From: Mizuhopecten yessoensis
Lineage: Eukaryota
Assembly (NCBI RefSeq): GCF_002113885.1
Contig: NW_018408532.1
Location: forward strand, 606,685 to 670,684
Length of the DNA: 64,000 nucleotides
Reading direction: 5' to 3'
In this document: in pieces, positions 51,592-59,909 of the stretch
How positions within the stretch are numbered: position 1 is the stretch's first letter
Layout of the letters: each line of letters opens with the position of its first letter
Position numbers and translations under genes: made by a program
The notes under the pieces: generated by a model
Told to the model about the DNA's origin: nothing
What the model saw: the letters and a program-made list of their open reading frames with translations, nothing else
The model's database searches: none

Positions 51592-53863
51592 TACATAACT
51601 CTTAAATAACGGCGTACGTATCCCTAGCCTGTCGATGTTACTGATATAATAGCTTCAGAACATCAGAATGACTAGCTTGGCGCCGTGCAATAACACGACT
51701 GGGTTAACCCCTTTCGACTCCAGACATACATAGGCACACTTACAATTACAACTACCAGAACCAATGAAAGTCAGCCTGAATCGTCGTGATCTCAAAAAGA
51801 CCTCAATAAATCCCGATAAACGGTTACATTGGAATGGCCTTGCTTTTAAGAATCGCTTTAGGAATGGAATTCTTGATTTTTTCAAGAATATTTATGTAAC
51901 TAATTTGGTCTAAATTGATACATCATTGACAGTATTTTAAAGTATGAACCCTTTTTTTCGTAAGATGTAGGAAACAAGTCTGACTTGATAACTGGTCCGT
52001 TCGTTTAAATGGCTTATATAAAGGGAATTCGGAGTGCTGCAAACATGCTCTGAGAAATGATGTACACATGAAGAGACAGTTTTATATTAAGATCTTTTTT
52101 CGAAGCCATTATTGCGATGTGCAATTCGGATTTTCGAGAGCTCGACAATGTAGACAGTATGTTTCGCTCGCAATCTGGAGGTTATTTTTATGATGATTAT
52201 CTGTTTTTGTTTCCAAATTACTTCTTGACTCCTGGAGAAAATATCGTCAATACGGAAATTGGCGGAGACACTGATCCCCCTGATAATACAGGTTCTTATC
52301 TAATATTACAGTATACCTTAGACACTGTTTGTGACTAACTAAATGGGTCGCTCAGAAGAACGTGCCCCGATTTTAATCAAGAAACGCAGAAGACATCAGC
52401 AACCTCCACTTATTCCACTTATTCCATTTTAATTCCTTAAGTTATACAACGTTTGATGAACAATGGTTTTGGACGTAATCTTATTTCATATCCCTATGTA
52501 AATGACAAAGAACAAGCAAATTTCAGTGTTATACAGCAGGCCTGTTCTTTCTCTGAACCTGCACAAAGTGTGACCATTTGTTTGTTTCGGGTTGAACGTT
52601 CTCGCAGCATCCAGGATCATATGAAGACTAGGTGACCATCTGACATTGCTAACTAACAGATAGGCAAGTTTCATCGATTACGAAGCTATGCTCTTAGAAC
52701 GATTTTTTGATATTTTCAGTTATAATCCAGAAATTATCGCGCCAGGTGTAATTTTATTCCTGAAATGATACTTATTAACATTTAACAACCTAAAACACAC
52801 ATATTTTAGGTGCATGCTCTTACCTGTGTAGGCGACCATGGGTTACGGTATACCCTTCATTTGCCATGACTAGTTTGTTGATTAACAATGAAAATATGAA
52901 ACGTTAACTGGCATACATTAGCCATCAAGTCTTCCTTTGCCATCCTTACGTTTACAATACATTTGCAATATATACCGCACTATATAAACGTACATGCACC
53001 ATTTGGCGTTTTCATGACAACAACACTCAAAGAGATCATCACATTTCGGTATTATTTATGGAATTCTGGATTGTTAACCTCTTTCTTTGTAAATATAATA
53101 TATGCTTAAGTGGAACCATTTCTTGCCAGTTTCCTCCTACGCTGACATACTATATTGAAAGAAAGATGAAAAGAGACAGGAGTATCAAATATCGGGAGTG
53201 TATTTCCGGAAGTTTCCTACCGATGTCTAATTAGTCACTGAATTGTCTGACCGATGTATCTAGGTCACCAAAAAGACATTGACATTAGTGCTACAATAGT
53301 TTCCACGTGCGTAGATAGTGGTAGGTACCACATATACGTGAATATAAATCACTCGCATGAGTTATGGTAAAGAGGCCTCCTACATTACTCTAAAAGTTAT
53401 TACTTACTAGAGTTTTGATTACTACCAACTATCATTCGTGTTGGCATTCAGAACATGATACCGCGGTTTTACCGGCCATTGTCCTCCCTAGTTAGGATAC
53501 AAACTACTTACTGATGATACTTTTGATCTCATTACCCGAATCGAGTACTTTGGTATACTCCCTGTTTCAATTGACACAAAAATTGTTAGGATTATTTTGC
53601 GCGTATGGATAATTTAAAAAGCGCATAGATACTCATATTTCTGAAGTAAGGTTAACGTTAATGCTACTACATGTATGCAGTCTGTGTACTCCGAATATAG
53701 AGGATCTGTCATAAGTTTCATATTTGATTTATGATACAAGTTTAGGGTTTTTCATGTTTGCAAGCCTCTGGCGAGTAAATATGAAAAATCAAAAACGAGT
53801 ATCATCAATCTTATATGTAGGGAATCGATATTTTTTTTATTTTTTTTTATCATATAATACAAA

Positions 53864-56800
53864 GGGCCGGTTTCCAAAACGGCCCCTTCTCTGATTCAAA
53901 TTTCCTGTTGGTGGTGCATTGCACATGCCGTTGTGGTCACAAATCTATAAAGTATAAAGATTTAGGTCACTTGGTTTGTTTTTTATGGCTCCTCAAAGTT
54001 GTACCTTTCAGAAGCTGTCTAAGTGTTGATAAAATGTGCATGTTATGTAAAATATTAATGAAAATCTAATCAAATGATGGTCACCGTAAAGAATACATTC
54101 ATGGCATGATTGTGACAAAAAATCATGTTTCCATCGCGCCATTTGGCTGTTTTATGGAAGAAACAATCTCAAAAATGCCATTTTCGATGATAACATTTTA
54201 GACACAAAAACTGTGTTTTTTAGAGAATACACCCTTTTATGGGCGTTGGATGCAAACCAATTTTTATCCTATTAAACAGTACGTAATATGCTATTGATGA
54301 GAGGAAAAATCATCAAAATGTAAGTGGTGGAACATTTTCAAATGTTGGGTTGAATTAGCCTATGGTTGAATTGCCGATTTTCGACTTTCTTTAGATAATT
54401 AACAAAAAAACGAGAGTATTTGCTCGGTATGTTGAGAATATGTACACAGATATGAAAAAAAGTGAGAGAAACACTTTTTCATAAAAAAAATCCAAGATGG
54501 CTACTTCACAAGTCCCCGTGGTTGAAGACATTGGCTGACAAATAGACAGAACAACAAACAAAACGTGTTCCTTATGATTTTGGTTGGTTTTCGCATTTAC
54601 GGGAGTGTTCATAGCTACGGGCGATTGTATAATACCTATATTTATAAGTTTGGTTAGTCACATGGTAACGGGGATCTTTCATATCGAGCCCCAAACATAC
54701 TTTCGACATATGCACTCCGTTGCCGCATGGAAAACTATTTCAAGTTTTGTCGGAATTTCTTTACCTGTGGTTGTAATGGTCGAGGGTTTTCCAGCGTCCT
54801 GTAATACCCAAGGTAGTACAAGATACTGGAGATGTGCGCACACATTCCCATCGTTCTCTCTCCAACTGGGCACTGGCAGTAGTAGTCCTTTATTGGGGCC
54901 TCAACATCGGGTGAAACGGTGAACCGTATCCAAACGTTATATTTCGTTTGGCTTTTGTGTCGAGAATGTATTTGACATCGGAGAAGGTCTGGGGAGTGCT
55001 GGTAAAGCCACACCTCATAGTCTCCGTCATCACTTAAATGTTCGGCGATGTAACCAGGAGCCAGAGATATCTGATACGTTCCACACGTAATGGTTCTCAA
55101 GTAATCAAGATCGAGACGGGGAAACAGTACGGAAGATGCATCCATCTTGACAAACTCGGACCTTGCCCGTCTAGATAGATCCGGATCTGTCTTGACTCTC
55201 TGAGCTAAACCATTCGGTGTTGTCAAACGGTCCTTCATACGTTCAGCCATTAGCCTATCTTTGGCATCTCTCTCTGGAGATCTCTGGTAGATCGGTCCTC
55301 TAATACCATTCAGACAGGCTGTGACGGTTCGAAGCAAAGCCTCGATGACATTGATAAAGCTGTTAGACACCAATTGCGTTCGGAAGAACGTCCAGTGTTT
55401 CAGACGACCATGATAGGATTCCACAATCCACCTCGATTTGGTGATAGTTCTGTCAAGATTTGCTTGGACGTCAGAATGTTGACTTTGACCGGGTTTCAGG
55501 TATGACGGCATGCTAGCATTGAGGCCAGAGGCTTCGAGAACTGGTAGGACATCTCTAAAACCTCGGTCAACGACAACGTTGTCGTCTGGTTGTAGCCAAG
55601 TAACTAGCTTGTCCATGACTTTTTTTGTAATTGTAGCATCATTTTCGCTGCCAGTGAATGGTCCTACTGTGTCCAGAATGTAGCCATCTGGTAAGGCGAT
55701 GCTCATGAATTTGAGATAGTTTCTCTTCTTCTGGCCACAGTAGGACATTCTCTGGAGCTTGTGGTCGGAGCTTTTCTGGATATAAATATAGGTGCCATCT
55801 AATATGGCAGTGGCTTTATCTCCAAAAAATGCTTCTGAAAAGACAGTATTGTGCCCGAGCAACTGTTCTCTTGTCAAGTGATCCGGACCTAGAAATTGTG
55901 GGACTATCGATGTGTCTAATGCCTGTACTATGGAGTGGAAAGTTTTGGACACACTTGACTTGGAAATTCCAAAAAGAGAAGAACACTGACTCCAGGAAAT
56001 GTCGGTTTTCAGTTTTACCCAGAACAGTAATAGAGCATCGTGTGTAGTCTTGGTATATATACCAGATGAAAGATATGGGGAACAGTGCGAGTGGATTTCG
56101 AGGAACTGATCTTTGGACCAACCTGTCCAGGCCATGCATGCCGAGTCATCAAGAGAAGAAAAGCTTATTGTAAACGCAGACTGGTTCTGTGAAAGGACGT
56201 GCGACACCTCTAGGAGGTCATTAATGATTTCGGACGATTTTGATGGTAACTGAGATTCCAAGGAACCTCTACCATCAAGGACAACCTCTGTAGACGGATC
56301 TAAGTCGTTACCAATAAGGTGAATGGAGCAGACGCGGGATGAGGTGGGACACCACAGTTTGTGTGAATAGATCAGGTGATGTCTTGCACGTTTTGGTAAG
56401 ACTGATGATTTTGTTCCATTTCTTGCAAAGGTAACAAGACAGAGACAGCATTTTTTGTGTGAAGATGATCCATTCAAAAGATCATGAAGGGTCAGCAACG
56501 GCAGGATATGGGACGGGGAGTCGTCTTCTTCCTCTATTTCCTGGTTCTGCTCGGGTTCAGGTTCAGGCTGATTTTTGTTCCGAAGATACTTCATGTAGCA
56601 CTTCTGGCAAATAAGTGCTTGTTCCTTTGCTGACATCAATCCTTGTTGCACCAGCGTATCTAGGAGCCATTTATATTGTGGACTATTTACATTGCGTGCA
56701 CTTCTGTTCTTATTGCCACTACGTTTCTTGAAGTATACTTGACACCCTTCTCCAACACATTTACCCTCCATCTTGAAACAATAACGATTGGTTTATGAAG

Positions 56801-57935
56801 CGTCGATAAAGTAACAAAATAGCAAGCCACCGATGATTGCTGTAAACAGCTAATACTTAGTAGTTTGGTACAATTATGCGAAAATGTGTGATAAATAACG
56901 AACAACTAATTACACAAAATAACAAGACAATATAATAAATCACATTCAATACCTCCAAGAAGCGCAGAATTGATTGATTACTTAGAACAAAATAAAGTAT
57001 TTCATATGGATAATCTATCTATTCGATGTGGCGTGGTCGGCAGGCACAAAGAAAGTGAGACAAGTCAGGGTCCCAACCCTGACAGAGCCACAACGCTTTG
57101 GAGATGGGACAATAAAACAAGGAAAGTGAGACAAGAATAGCTAGCGTCGAGTCAATGATTCCGTAAACGTATAGACAAAGACAAGAAGATACGGATAAAT
57201 GTACAAGGCCACACGATCAGAAAATTCAGAAGAGGACAACTTGAGATAGAACAGTATTCATGTATCAGGGTGTCCTCAGTGTAAATCTTTATATCGATAC
57301 TGTTTATTTAGTCGTTACACATCATAAAACTGTCATGAAAATATCCGCTCTGATATTCAATATAAAAGTTTGTATATAATAAGCTATATAATAGGGTTTC
57401 AGACAAGGTTGTTACTCATTTCCCCTTTTCTTTCAATTTACAACCACATTCAGGCGGCGATATGAGAACGTTCCACCACATGGAATTAGCTGATTTTTGG
57501 TACACATATGAAACAAGTAAAGCTCTATCCGATTTTCTGATGGAAATTTGCATCCAAAACTATATAACGGGAGAAAATTGCAATTTTATGGCATTTTTCT
57601 TCATAATTGTGTCTCTGCAAGTGCATTTTCATCCGAGAATTTTTTTTTTTTTTTTTTATGAATAAACACGATGTTTTGGAAATATTTATCAAAAGAAATT
57701 TATACTATGTTGCGAATTACAATTTCGAGATAACCTTCTTTTATTTACGAACTTATGTCTTTGATGCTGAAATTGACAACTTTATAAAAATATATTTTCA
57801 CTGAAATTATGAAATCTGGGTGTCGGAAAGGTGTAAAATTATTCTTCGGAAAAGAAAAAAACAGTAGTTGAGCTAGATAAGAAATTATACGGGGGCAGGC
57901 TCCTATGGAGAATTAACATTACTGGAAACAGGCCC
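53864..57935 (-). mobile_element. Putatively autonomous cut-and-paste DNA transposon, 4072 bp, PIF/Harbinger-ISL2EU-Spy (IS5-related) group
   Basis: 13-bp TIRs GGGCCGGTTTCCA (53864-53876) and TGGAAACAGGCCC (57923-57935) have 1 mismatch. The element is flanked by AAA and TTT and holds a single intact transposase ORF. Confidence 0.85.
54735..56771 (-). CDS. DDE transposase (DDE_Tnp_4-type) with N-terminal Cys-rich Zn-finger motifs, HTH and C-terminal SWIM zinc finger, 678 aa
   Basis: Intact intronless ORF. Catalytic-type motifs ILDGTY, NDA, VVDRGFRD and RWIVESYHGRLK. HTH-like LLLFWVKLKTDISWSQCSSLFGISKSSVSKTF. SWIM CQCPVGERTMGMCAH (CxC...CxH). N-terminal CxxxxC, CxxC, CCLC and CxxH motifs. Confidence 0.93.
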   Translation of the reverse strand: MEGKCVGEGCQVYFKKRSGNKNRSARNVNSPQYKWLLDTLVQQGLMSAKEQALICQKCYMKYLRNKNQPEPEPEQNQEIEEEDDSPSHILPLLTLHDLLNGSSSHKKCCLCLVTFARNGTKSSVLPKRARHHLIYSHKLWCPTSSRVCSIHLIGNDLDPSTEVVLDGRGSLESQLPSKSSEIINDLLEVSHVLSQNQSAFTISFSSLDDSACMAWTGWSKDQFLEIHSHCSPYLSSGIYTKTTHDALLLFWVKLKTDISWSQCSSLFGISKSSVSKTFHSIVQALDTSIVPQFLGPDHLTREQLLGHNTVFSEAFFGDKATAILDGTYIYIQKSSDHKLQRMSYCGQKKRNYLKFMSIALPDGYILDTVGPFTGSENDATITKKVMDKLVTWLQPDDNVVVDRGFRDVLPVLEASGLNASMPSYLKPGQSQHSDVQANLDRTITKSRWIVESYHGRLKHWTFFRTQLVSNSFINVIEALLRTVTACLNGIRGPIYQRSPERDAKDRLMAERMKDRLTTPNGLAQRVKTDPDLSRRARSEFVKMDASSVLFPRLDLDYLRTITCGTYQISLAPGYIAEHLSDDGDYEVWLYQHSPDLLRCQIHSRHKSQTKYNVWIRFTVSPDVEAPIKDYYCQCPVGERTMGMCAHISSILYYLGYYRTLENPRPLQPQVKKFRQNLK

Positions 57936-58439
57936 TTTAACTGTAAAATTGTGATCTGGAACGAATATTTTGCACCTCTGAAGTGATATAAATTGCGTCT
58001 GCCTCACAATGAAGTGACGTAACAATGATTGTTCCTATTCGATTGTGACGTCATTTCCGGAGTGATGTTACACACGTTACATAACCATCATTTATCACAT
58101 AATGTACTATGTTATCCAGTGAATATACTGATGTCATATTTTTTTGCGTATAAGCCCATGTAATATGACCTATCAGCCCTGTGTTTCAATTGTGACGTCA
58201 CACCTTGGACAAGTACATGACTTCACAGCCTTACGCACTGGAGTCTCAAAATGACGACTTTTTACATTTCAAGGTTGCTTGAAAATTGTCGTTTAACACG
58301 AATAAATGCCACAAATAGAAAAATTCTTAGACTCGTTTCATACATATCATATGAAATGGAAACTCATGTAAGATCCTATATTTATGTGATGGTTTTATTA
58401 CACTGCATAAAACAGTATTCAATTTTGCTCACGGAAGAA

Positions 58440-58484
58440 AAATAATAAACTTCCTCTAATTACATTAGAGGAAGTTTATTATTT
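58440..58484. repeat. Perfect 21-bp inverted repeat with 3-nt loop
   Basis: AAATAATAAACTTCCTCTAAT-TAC-ATTAGAGGAAGTTTATTATTT. Confidence 0.92.
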
Positions 58485-59909
58485 AGATTTCCATAAGTAC
58501 TCAACGCATTGCCCCGCAAGAAGATACTTATATTCTCGTGGGATATATAAAACATGCTCAGGTTTTTTTTACTTATTCATAAGAGATAATTAAGAAATGG
58601 TGTGTAATAGTCCCATGTCATTTTAGTTTTAAACCTGCAACTAGAAGCATTGAGATCTTTATTTGATCATTAAGTATTTAATGTACTAGCTGAAGTTTTT
58701 AACCGGAGATCCAGTTTAACACACACAGACGCTTAAGGCTTTATTGTACCTATGTAAAACCCACGGCGGATTATTTTTAATGCTGCAGTCACCTCCGTCA
58801 TAATTCTTGTGTATTGCTGTAAGTATTCATTGTTTCCTTAGGGGAGTGCTATATAACCATCTTTACTGAACCACATTCCTGACAAACTCTAAACAAAACA
58901 CTTGTAATGCAAGGATCTGAATGTTATCGCCAGTCTTTGGTACAAAACATTGCATGATGGAGTATAATGTGCTATGAATACTGTAGTGGATAAACCTGAA
59001 CCTTATCTTTGGTATAAACCATTGTATAAGATAAAACAGTGTGTGTATATACGAAATACGCAGGGTATGTTTCTAGGGATCAATTCTTACTCTTTCTTTT
59101 GTACACAGCATATTTTGGAATATATATGTTTTATGTATATTGCTGGAAATCAAGTCAAGTTCCCTTTTGTACAAATATAACATTGTATACTATATGGAGT
59201 AATGATATCAAAATCTTGCAAAAAAAGTACGAATTATGGACAGAAGATACAAACATGTTAGATCTGTGCATCGAGATATTTACTCCAACCTTTTTACATT
59301 GTTTCAGAAAGCATTGTTGTATTGTTCTGTGAACACAAAGACCAAAAGCATGTGGTTTGACATCTGTCACATGGTGCTATGCCAGGATTGTTTTTTAAAG
59401 TGATATTTCCAACACAACATTTTCGATGTGTCAGCGCATGATATAAACACGTGCAGTTTATTGTATATCATACACACATGCATATACAATGTTTGTTGCA
59501 AAATTTTGTACGCACGCGATCTATTTATACCCGTTGAGATTGCCTCTTTATTCCTCACTCGAGAAAAAACAACATTGTACGTATGGTGTACTCAGTATCG
59601 TTATTAACATTTCTGGTTATCAACATTGATGCCCGCGTTTCGCCAAGTACGTAACAATTTCAGTACAGATCAAGCGGAGACAGGGGCTCATGTTATCGAC
59701 ATATTTACACGTTACACTTCTATCAATGGCCGCCAACAGTTTTAATTAGAAAAAAAGATAACAACCTTTCTCTCGTAGTGTGATGTTTTACAAAAAACAA
59801 ACTAGATCTCTACGTTATTTCTGGATAGGAAGAACTCACCAACATTCTTCATATAATGCTTTACTTCCTATAAAATTTTGACATCAACAGAACGACGGGT
59901 GCCGTCAAA

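What the first reader, a model, noticed from the sequence alone, without database searches (positions are those of the whole stretch)
53861..57938. Intact single-ORF DDE+SWIM transposon inserted at AAA|TTT with no target-site duplication
Seen: 13-bp TIRs (GGGCC(G/T)GTTTCCA) bound 4072 bp and are flanked by ...ATACAAA and TTTAACT..., with no duplicated flanking sequence. The single ORF is an uninterrupted 678 aa. Known: PIF/Harbinger makes 3-bp TSDs and uses a second Myb/SANT ORF. ISL2EU typically makes AT TSDs and has a second YqaJ-exonuclease ORF. TSD-less insertion into AAATTT is the described behaviour of Spy elements. Inference: this element combines a DDE_Tnp_4-type core, a fused SWIM finger, no partner ORF and Spy-like blunt integration. 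It may be a poorly characterised lineage, recently active, and potentially capable of scarless excision.
Basis: partly seen in the sequence, partly recalled or inferred. Interest (0 to 1): 0.8.

Follow-up and report, generated by a model that had tools for sequence, protein, structure and literature searches.

The report
Active Spy-family DNA transposon in scallop

Summary
Window 53864-57935 is a 4072-bp element with 13-bp terminal inverted repeats (12/13) and one uninterrupted 678-aa ORF.

- **Copies:** the assembly holds 330-441 left ends and at least 350 right ends.
- **Flanks:** 318 of 330 exact left ends follow AAA. 342 right ends precede TTT, against 8 followed by a non-T base.
- **Empty sites:** paralogous empty sites for two independent insertions, one of them this one, read an unbroken AAATTT. 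AAA and TTT are therefore host bases, and no duplication is made.

The interpretation as a new combination does not hold. A single HTH + DDE_Tnp_4 transposase of about 700 aa, no partner ORF and TSD-less AAA|TTT insertion define the Spy group (Han 2014). Two members were shown to transpose in human cells in 2024.

The protein aligns along its full length with an ant Spy transposase. Its GGGCC terminus matches that of the active cgSpy.

The SWIM finger is real: the fold matches ZSWIM8 at Z 7.0. It is not a lineage-specific fusion, because CxCx9CxH is invariant in 25/25 relatives. The Spy papers do not mention it.

All 28 same-length copies encode an identical protein. A 97.6%-identical copy lies in the scallop Ylistrum balloti.

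Verdict: new member of a known kind, of modest interest.

The parts
53861..53863 (.). Host AAA half of the AAATTT target. It is not part of the element.
   Evidence: Paralogous empty sites read an unbroken AAATTT. 318 of 330 exact left ends follow AAA.
53864..57935 (-). Autonomous Spy-family DNA transposon, 4072 bp. The transposase is encoded on the minus strand.
   Evidence: At least 36 near-identical full-length copies were found. The assembly holds 330-441 left ends and at least 350 right ends.
53864..53876 (+). Left terminal inverted repeat GGGCCGGTTTCCA
   Evidence: The same GGGCC start is seen in a 57%-identical relative (L032) and in the cgSpy primer AAAGGGCCTGG.
57923..57935 (-). Right terminal inverted repeat, GGGCCTGTTTCCA on the minus strand
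57936..57938 (.). Host TTT half of the AAATTT target
54735..56771 (-). Transposase ORF of 678 aa plus stop codon
   Evidence: The translation is identical in 28 of 28 same-length copies. At least 52 further copies show an open frame with no stop.
56598..56759 (-). N-terminal Cys4 motif, residues 5-58 (C5, C10 ... C55-x2-C58)
   Evidence: C55 and C58 are invariant. C5 and C10 are present in 22 of 25 relatives. That it binds zinc is an inference.
56319..56450 (-). C2CH motif with THAP-like spacing, residues 108-151 (C108-x2-C111-x36-C148-x2-H151)
   Evidence: C108, C148 and H151 are invariant. The model shows a beta-alpha-beta arrangement. Pfam THAP is not detected, so this is a resemblance only.
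55908..56045 (-). HTH_Tnp_4 DNA-binding helix-turn-helix, residues 243-288
   Evidence: Pfam E 3.4e-7, above the cut-off.
55314..55802 (-). DDE_Tnp_4 catalytic core, residues 324-486, with D325, D402 and E451
   Evidence: Pfam E 1.9e-17. D, D and E are invariant in 25 of 25 relatives, with spacing D(76)D(48)E. Fold matches are piggyBac, Tn5, Mos1 and integrases.
54768..55154 (-). C-terminal SWIM-type domain, residues 540-668. The signature C632-x-C634-x9-C644-x-H646 is encoded at 54834-54878.
   Evidence: The signature is invariant in 25 of 25 relatives. The domain model has pLDDT 92.8. The best solved match is ZSWIM8, Z 7.0, with the next at 4.9. ESM Atlas matches are SWIM clusters. Pfam SWIM is sub-threshold in 8 of 25 members.
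54305..54343 (+). Left subterminal repeat, 441 bp from the left end, inverted relative to 57460-57498
   Evidence: 39 nt, 77% complementary, at mirror-image distances from the two ends. A role as a transposase-binding site is an inference.
57460..57498 (-). Right subterminal repeat, 437 bp from the right end
1003..1038 (+). Paralogous empty site for the copy in L012, inside a reverse-transcriptase-like repeat, with AAATTT at 1016-1021
   Evidence: 95% identity over 714 bp, colinear across the junction. It is also listed as G000:C5205:607687-607722.

Best explanation

**The transposase.** The one 678-aa protein has, in order:
- two N-terminal cysteine-rich motifs;
- an HTH_Tnp_4 DNA-binding domain;
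- an RNase-H-like DDE core (D325, D402, E451);
- a C-terminal SWIM-type zinc-finger domain.

**Proposed mechanism (inferred).** The protein binds the 13-bp GGGCC... ends. It cuts the element out with double-strand breaks exactly at the boundaries. It then joins both 3' ends to directly opposed phosphates at the centre of the palindromic host site AAATTT. Because the two joins are not staggered, no gap is filled and no target-site duplication arises.

**Shown here**
- The anatomy of the element.
- The AAA|TTT flanks and the unbroken AAATTT at empty sites.
- Membership of the family.
- Several hundred near-identical copies, with many internal-deletion derivatives.

**Inferred**
- The zero-stagger chemistry, which is the proposal of Han et al. 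2014.
- The role of the zinc fingers.
- Precise restoration of AAATTT on excision.
- That the element still moves today.
For: **Target site**
- 29 of 29 fetched copies are flanked by AAA|TTT, with variable bases at -4 and +4.
- 318 of 330 left ends follow AAA. 342 right ends precede TTT, against 8 followed by a non-T base.
- Empty sites with an intact AAATTT exist for two independent insertions.

**Published definition of Spy**
- AAA|TTT target, no TSD, single ORF, N-terminal HTH, D(79-80)D(44-62)E (PMC4122938).
- About 700 aa, with activity in human cells (PMC11304231).

**Homology**
- The protein is 31% identical over 87% of its length to P0049, E 8.7e-70.
- The P0049 gene lies in an ant element bounded AAA|GGACCTCG...CGAGGTCC|TTT, with about 347-bp inverted repeats.
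- That ant species is listed as a Spy carrier.
- A 57%-identical relative is bounded AAA|GGGCCTCTTTCAT...|TTT.
- The cgSpy primers start AAAGGGCCTGG.

**Tree.** The window's protein nests among the ant, moth, rotifer and bivalve clades. A THAP-HTH-DDE protein serves as outgroup.

**Activity**
- 28 of 28 copies have an identical ORF, with pi about 0.0006.
- At least 52 more copies have open frames.
- Pairing the coordinates gives 39 of 61 pairs at 4055-4078 bp. Eighteen are internally deleted, from 296 to 4036 bp. Such deletion copies are what interrupted gap repair after excision would leave.
Against: - The terminal motif is GGGCCGGT rather than the published GGANNNNG consensus.
- The D-D spacing is 76, not 79-80.
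- No reference Spy, ISL2EU or Harbinger sequences from Repbase or Dfam were available. The tree has a single long-branched outgroup, and its root is weakly supported.
- No allelic empty site or excision product was seen in the four runs laid on the locus. These runs were available only as contigs.
- The blunt-joining chemistry has not been shown biochemically for any Spy element, as far as the papers read here say.
Confidence: 0.9

Rival explanations
1. AAA and TTT are the outermost bases of the element, giving 16-bp repeats AAAGGGCC.../...GGCCCTTT. On this reading the element belongs to another superfamily, for example a Kolobok-like one with a TTAA target. Its duplication would be absent or hidden.
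For: AAA and TTT are themselves inverted complements, so the copies alone cannot tell host from element. The right flank of this copy reads TTAA.
Against: - Empty paralogous sites keep AAATTT, with nothing missing and nothing duplicated.
- Positions -4 and +4 vary, so there is no TTAA or other duplication.
- The protein is a DDE_Tnp_4 type, not a Kolobok type.
Confidence: 0.02
2. It is a new PHIS lineage, distinct from Spy. It would have acquired a SWIM finger and TSD-less AAATTT insertion independently.
For: - The terminal motif GGGCCGGT departs from GGANNNNG.
- The D-D spacing is 76 rather than 79-80.
- The window's clade of 13 proteins is well separated, at 100% support.
- The Spy papers mention no SWIM finger. 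The 2014 paper says most Spy transposases lack zinc fingers.
Against: - The SWIM signature, both N-terminal cysteine motifs and the DDE residues are shared with an ant transposase from an element that meets the published Spy criteria, and with moth, rotifer and bivalve relatives.
- The clade is nested within these relatives, not outside them.
- cgSpy, an accepted and active Spy, has the same GGGCCTG terminus.
Confidence: 0.06
3. The many identical copies are an assembly or haplotig artefact, or a segmental duplication, not transposition.
For: The assembly is fragmented (82,659 contigs), and the fetched copies are almost identical.
Against: - Every fetched copy has different flanks beyond AAA and TTT.
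- There are hundreds of ends on different contigs.
- Contigs of four independent sequencing runs give the element roughly 100-500 times the word depth of the single-copy left flank. The tool warns that this figure is not a copy number.
- Internal-deletion derivatives share both ends.
Confidence: 0.01

Closest known systems
Spy transposons (Han et al. 2014, PMC4122938), including cgSpy from Colletes gigas and cvSpy from Crassostrea virginica (PMC11304231)
   Same: - Insertion exactly between AAA and TTT with no duplication.
- A single ORF of about 700 aa with an HTH and a DDE_Tnp_4 core.
- No partner ORF, and short GG-initial inverted repeats.
- An invertebrate host, with bivalves already on the published host list.
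- The terminus GGGCC(T/G)G is shared with cgSpy.
- Full-length protein homology to an ant Spy transposase.
   Different: - The terminal motif is GGGCCGGT, not GGANNNNG.
- The D-D spacing is 76, not 79-80.
- This high-copy intact family is not in the 2024 survey table. That table lists only TIR-less fragments for the two scallop species (ORFs of 284 and 372 aa).
- The conserved SWIM-type C-terminal domain and the N-terminal cysteine motifs are not described in the Spy papers read here.
ISL2EU
   Same: It is the sister group of Spy in published trees. Its transposase has an HTH_Tnp_4 + DDE_Tnp_4 core, a GG-initial terminus and an N-terminal zinc finger (THAP).
   Different: ISL2EU makes AT duplications and carries a second ORF with a YqaJ exonuclease. 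Neither is present here. The nearest THAP-HTH-DDE protein found (P0104) ends right after the DDE core and lacks the C-terminal SWIM domain.
PIF/Harbinger
   Same: It has a DDE_Tnp_4 catalytic core, descends from IS5-like elements and prefers AT-rich targets.
   Different: Harbinger makes 3-bp TWA duplications and needs a separate Myb/SANT protein. Neither is present here.
MULE/MuDR transposases and their FAR1/FHY3 derivatives
   Same: They have a C-terminal SWIM CxCxnCxH zinc finger after the catalytic domain.
   Different: They have an unrelated catalytic-domain family, 9-11-bp duplications and long inverted repeats. The shared SWIM finger is a domain-level resemblance only.
piggyBac
   Same: It is a cut-and-paste element whose excision can restore the target exactly. 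It is the top whole-model fold match, though a weak one.
   Different: piggyBac duplicates TTAA and restores it on excision. It has a different transposase family and a different cysteine-rich C-terminal domain.

Membership tests
Spy (PHIS superfamily) | Insertion precisely between host AAA and TTT, with no target-site duplication or deletion | tested here: met
   29 of 29 fetched copies are so flanked. 318 of 330 left ends follow AAA, and 342 right ends precede TTT. Empty sites with an intact AAATTT exist for two insertions.
Spy (PHIS superfamily) | A single long ORF encoding the transposase, with no second ORF | tested here: met
   The only ORFs of 80 aa or more are the 678-aa ORF and two short frames that overlap it.
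Spy (PHIS superfamily) | DDE triad with spacing D(79-80)D(44-62)E | tested here: inconclusive
   The spacing here is D(76)D(48)E. Relatives in the same alignment show D(77-82)D(46-48)E. The D-E spacing fits. The D-D spacing is 3 residues short because of a loop deletion.
Spy (PHIS superfamily) | Helix-turn-helix N-terminal to the catalytic core | tested here: met
   HTH_Tnp_4 at residues 243-288, E 3.4e-7.
Spy (PHIS superfamily) | Terminal consensus 5'-GGANNNNG-3', described as 'relatively well conserved' | tested here: not met
   The terminus is GGGCCGGT. Only the initial GG agrees. However, cgSpy, an accepted active Spy, starts GGGCCTGG according to its cloning primers. The consensus is therefore not strict.
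Spy (PHIS superfamily) | Transposase falls in the Spy clade, sister to ISL2EU | tested here: inconclusive
   The protein is nested among the ant, moth, rotifer and bivalve relatives, with a THAP-HTH-DDE outgroup. Only one outgroup was available, the root is weakly supported, and no curated reference sequences were at hand.
PIF/Harbinger | 3-bp TWA duplication and a second Myb/SANT ORF | tested here: not met
   There is no duplication and no second ORF.
ISL2EU | AT duplication, a second ORF with a YqaJ exonuclease, and a THAP domain in the transposase | tested here: not met
   There is no AT duplication and no second ORF. Pfam THAP is not detected in any of 25 relatives. Only a C2CH spacing resembles it.
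Kolobok | TTAA duplication on both sides | tested here: not met
   At position -4 the bases are C12, T9, A4, G4. At +4 they are G11, A7, C6, T5.
SWIM zinc finger (PF04434) | CxCxnCxH signature on a beta-sheet-plus-helix fold | tested here: met
   - C632-x-C634-x9-C644-x-H646 is invariant in 25 of 25 relatives.
- In the model the CxC ends a strand and the CxH opens a helix.
- The best solved match is ZSWIM8 residues 109-212, Z 7.0 against 4.9 for the next. Shu2 also appears, at Z 3.8.
- Bacterial PF04434 clusters match at TM 0.56-0.57.
- The Pfam score itself is below the cut-off: E 0.05 here, and 1e-3 at best in the family.

The most novel reading that the evidence does not exclude
The C-terminal SWIM-type domain, of about 130 aa, is a hallmark of all Spy transposases that sets them apart from ISL2EU and Harbinger enzymes, whose proteins end after the DDE core.

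It is structurally close to the SWIM domain of eukaryotic YqaJ-exonuclease proteins, the kind of partner protein that ISL2EU elements encode. Spy may therefore have arisen from an ISL2EU-like two-gene element: the partner's SWIM module would have been captured into the transposase and the exonuclease lost. On this reading the domain is what permits recognition of the palindromic AAATTT and unstaggered, duplication-free joining.

Separately, this scallop family may have spread by recent horizontal transfer between scallop lineages and may still be transposing.
Probability: 0.15. Interest if true: 0.6.

Novelty: new member of a known kind. Interest (0 to 1): 0.3.

Why it matters
Spy is the only eukaryotic cut-and-paste group known to integrate without a target-site duplication. 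Two members were turned into gene-transfer tools in 2024.

This bivalve family has several hundred copies. Of those examined, at least 80 carry an open ORF, and 28 fetched copies encode an identical protein. That makes it a strong natural candidate for an active element.

It also gives a clean data set for studying:
- target choice;
- internal-deletion derivatives;
- insertion polymorphism in an aquaculture species.

The conserved SWIM-type domain and cysteine motifs correct the published statement that most Spy transposases lack zinc fingers. They also name specific residues to mutate when asking how duplication-free integration works.

The 97.6%-identical copy in a distant scallop points to horizontal transfer.

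None of this changes the classification of the element, so the finding is useful rather than surprising.

Tried and rejected
- **Allelic empty site in reads.** I laid four independent runs on 53300-58500 to look for an empty allele. Only assembled contigs were available. Contigs of two runs (X9, X15) cross the left junction, so the insertion is present there. No clean 53863-to-57936 joint was seen. A few joints that skip 4083-4300 bp have short sides (20-25 nt) and probably come from paralogues.
- **Third empty site.** A search for the joined flanks of the copy in L027 found nothing. Only a 77%-identical paralogue, colinear across the junction, was seen locally.
- **More copies.** Copy lengths were therefore derived by pairing the coordinates listed.
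- **Whole-protein fold search.** It gave only generic DDE transposase and integrase matches at low TM-scores.
- **Sequence search of the C-terminal profile against solved structures.** It gave nothing.
- **THAP test.** A profile comparison with the THAP-HTH-DDE protein P0104 aligned only the HTH + DDE part. Pfam finds no THAP domain in any relative. The THAP likeness of residues 108-151 therefore rests on spacing and predicted topology alone.
- **Literature.** Searches found no paper linking SWIM to Harbinger, ISL2EU or Spy. This absence covers only the held library.
- **Not run.** I did not run the large representative-protein search, because the family was already identified.
- **Organism.** The tools did not name the organism. 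The assembly size and contig count recall Mizuhopecten yessoensis from memory, but I could not verify this.


Full report
**1. What is in the sequence**

The element proper is window 53864-57935, 4072 bp.
- It starts with GGGCCGGTTTCCA and ends with TGGAAACAGGCCC. These ends are 13-bp inverted repeats with one mismatch.
- One uninterrupted ORF of 678 aa runs on the minus strand at 54735-56771. The only other ORFs of 80 aa or more overlap it.
- Pfam finds HTH_Tnp_4 (residues 243-288), DDE_Tnp_4 (residues 324-486, E 1.9e-17) and a sub-threshold SWIM match at 627-654 (E 0.05).

**2. It is a real, abundant repeat**

- The window's own genome is 988 Mb in 82,659 contigs. It holds at least 36 full-length copies at about 100% identity.
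- The exact 30-nt left end occurs 330 times, and 441 times with up to 2 mismatches. The reversed control finds none.
- The exact right end followed by TTT occurs 342 times.
- I paired the left- and right-end coordinates listed and obtained 61 pairs:
  - 39 are 4055-4078 bp long.
  - 18 are internally deleted. Fifteen of these are 296, 371, 678, 885, 1044, 1328, 1963, 2020, 2785, 2828, 3294, 3436, 3466, 3670 and 3855 bp. Three are 4008-4036 bp.
  - 4 are longer, from 7.9 to 16.8 kb. These may be nested insertions, gaps or unrelated ends.
- Among the 29 fetched copies, 28 have the same length.
  - They differ by 2.4 nt per 4072 bp on average.
  - All 28 encode the identical 678-aa protein.
  - These were the best-scoring copies, so they are a biased sample.
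- A protein search lists at least 52 further copies with an open frame and no stop.
- Contigs of four independent sequencing runs give the element roughly 100-500 times the word depth of the single-copy left flank. The tool warns that this is not a copy number.

**3. The target site**

- All 29 fetched copies are flanked by AAA on the left and TTT on the right. The neighbouring positions vary. At -4 the bases are C12, T9, A4, G4. At +4 they are G11, A7, C6, T5. There is therefore no duplication and no TTAA.
- Genome-wide, 318 of 330 exact left ends follow AAA. 342 right ends precede TTT, against 8 that are followed by a non-T base.
- The copies alone cannot say whether AAA and TTT belong to the host or to the element. 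Empty sites settle this.
  - The joined flanks of the copy in L012 align at 95% over 714 bp with a paralogous reverse-transcriptase-like repeat in this window. The alignment is colinear across the junction, with AAATTT at 1016-1021.
  - The same joined 36-mer occurs 10 times exactly and 30 times with up to 3 mismatches in the genome.
- The joined flanks of this very insertion occur at two other places and read ...ATACAAATTTAACTGTA....
- AAA and TTT are therefore host bases. Insertion is at the centre of AAATTT, and nothing is duplicated or lost.

**4. What it is**

These features are the published definition of Spy.
- Han et al. 2014 (PMC4122938) describe:
  - insertion between AAA and TTT without a duplication, proved with paralogous and orthologous empty sites;
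  - a single ORF;
  - an N-terminal HTH;
  - a D(79-80)D(44-62)E triad;
  - a sister relation to ISL2EU;
  - hosts that include a bivalve.
- The 2024 paper (PMC11304231) lists 182 Spy elements in 172 species. It describes transposases of about 700 aa. It shows that cgSpy and cvSpy transpose in human cells into AAATTT without a duplication.

Direct links from this element to that family:
- The protein aligns along its full length (31% identity, E 8.7e-70) with P0049 from the ant Cyphomyrmex costatus. That species is in the 2024 table.
- The P0049 gene lies in a 2890-bp element bounded AAA|GGACCTCG...CGAGGTCC|TTT, with about 347-bp inverted repeats.
- A 57%-identical relative from another assembly is bounded AAA|GGGCCTCTTTCAT...ATGAAAGAGGCCC|TTT.
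- The cloning primers for the active cgSpy start AAAGGGCCTGG, the same terminus as here.
- In a maximum-likelihood tree of 53 proteins, the window's protein lies in a 13-member clade. That clade is nested among the rotifer, moth, ant and bivalve clades. A THAP-HTH-DDE protein serves as outgroup. The root is weakly supported and I had no curated references.

Departures from the published description:
- The terminus is GGGCCGGT rather than GGANNNNG.
- The D-D spacing is 76 rather than 79-80.

**5. The SWIM finger and the other cysteine motifs**

In an alignment of 25 relatives (bivalves, ants, a moth and unnamed sequences), the following are conserved:
- C632-x-C634-x9-C644-x-H646 is invariant in all 25.
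- D325, D402 and E451 are invariant in all 25.
- C55-x2-C58 is invariant, and is paired with C5 and C10 in 22 of 25.
- C108-x2-C111 ... C148-x2-H151 is conserved. This is a C2CH spacing like that of THAP.

Structural evidence:
- AlphaFold2 models the whole protein at pLDDT 85.6 and the C-terminal domain at 92.8.
- An exhaustive structural search of that domain puts the SWIM-containing N-terminal region of ZSWIM8 first (Z 7.0, 96 residues aligned). The next chain scores 4.9. The SWIM protein Shu2 also appears, at Z 3.8.
- ESM Atlas neighbours are SWIM-type clusters and bacterial PF04434 proteins. Eukaryotic YqaJ + SWIM proteins also appear (TM 0.56-0.74).
- Pfam SWIM is sub-threshold in 8 of 25 members, with a best E of 1e-3.

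The SWIM domain is therefore real, but it is a family-wide feature, not a fusion in this lineage.
- The nearest THAP-HTH-DDE protein ends right after the DDE core. The roughly 180-residue C-terminal extension may thus be specific to Spy.
- The Spy papers do not mention it. The 2014 paper states that most Spy transposases appear to lack zinc fingers. Searches of the held library found no paper linking SWIM with Harbinger, ISL2EU or Spy.
- One relative carries the automatic UniRef name 'SWIM-type domain-containing protein'.

**6. How it most likely works**

- **Shown:** the ends, the target, the absence of a duplication, the conserved catalytic and zinc-binding residues, the recent amplification and the deletion derivatives.
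- **Inferred from the DDE family and from Han et al. 2014:**
  - The transposase binds the ends as a multimer.
  - It makes double-strand breaks exactly at the element boundaries.
  - It joins both 3' hydroxyls to opposed phosphates at the dyad of AAATTT, so no gap is filled.
- Precise religation after excision would restore AAATTT. This is untested.
- The subterminal inverted repeats about 440 bp from each end may be extra binding sites.

**7. Beyond the finding**

- A copy 97.6% identical over about 3.9 kb, with a roughly 200-bp internal deletion, lies in the Ylistrum balloti assembly.
  - It is flanked by AAA|TTT and sits inside a CUB/lectin gene.
  - The gene model has taken up pieces of the element as exons.
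  - The 16.6 kb beside that copy has no match above about 76% over more than 300 bp in the window's genome.
  - The best match to the host part of the gene is 48-54% identical in protein.
  - This contrast suggests horizontal transfer. Orthology was not established, and only the best candidates are scored.
- The genome also holds other, more divergent Spy-like lineages, one with a two-exon gene. This agrees with another first-reader note.
- The 2024 survey lists, for the two scallop species, only TIR-less fragments with ORFs of 284 and 372 aa. If this genome is one of them, which I could not verify, the intact high-copy family was missed there.

**8. Verdict**

The element is a new, high-copy, probably active member of the known Spy group. 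The claimed novelty of the architecture is not supported. The conserved SWIM-type domain is a small but real addition to what the Spy papers describe.

Noticed in passing
L033:16664-20516 (Ylistrum balloti assembly GCA_031769215.1, contig JAUZWB010001353.1): A copy of the same element in another scallop genus. It is 97.6% identical over about 3.9 kb, has a roughly 200-bp internal deletion and is flanked by AAA|TTT. Surrounding host DNA finds no comparably similar sequence in the window's genome, which suggests recent horizontal transfer.
   Followed up: partly
L033:6001-24858 (protein P0103): The annotated Ylistrum CUB/lectin gene model includes exons taken from the transposon. Residues 156-221 are 91% identical to the transposase, and residues around 226-251 match the element's left end. 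It is probably a chimeric annotation or an exonised insertion.
   Followed up: partly
window 57939-58385: The DNA directly right of the element is itself a high-copy repeat. Its word depth is about a thousand times that of the left flank in all four runs, and many contigs break at 58381-58385. Its nature was not determined.
   Followed up: no
window 706-1414: A reverse-transcriptase-like repeat (it encodes a YADD motif). Its family served as the target of another copy of the element. At least 30 paralogues share the AAATTT site.
   Followed up: partly
G000:C5376:180865-183384, C5399:1068027-1070546, C5569:1166100-1168619 and others (C617, C2186, C3816, C4192, C5246): Other, more divergent Spy-like transposase genes lie in the same genome, 42-63% identical to an Argopecten relative. 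One type is split into two exons by an intron of about 460 bp.
   Followed up: no
window 53864-53885: The left end can form a short hairpin: GGGCCG, then 10 nt, then CGGCCC. The right end cannot, and the stem is not conserved in the Ylistrum copy. It is probably of no significance.
   Followed up: no
window 53923 and 57793: This copy has two private substitutions outside the ORF (A for C, and T for C). They differ from all other fetched copies and from the contigs of all four runs.
   Followed up: yes
ESM Atlas matches of the C-terminal domain model: Eukaryotic proteins that combine a YqaJ exonuclease with a SWIM domain resemble the Spy C-terminal domain in predicted structure (TM 0.57-0.62). 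YqaJ is the partner ORF of ISL2EU, the sister group of Spy.
   Followed up: no
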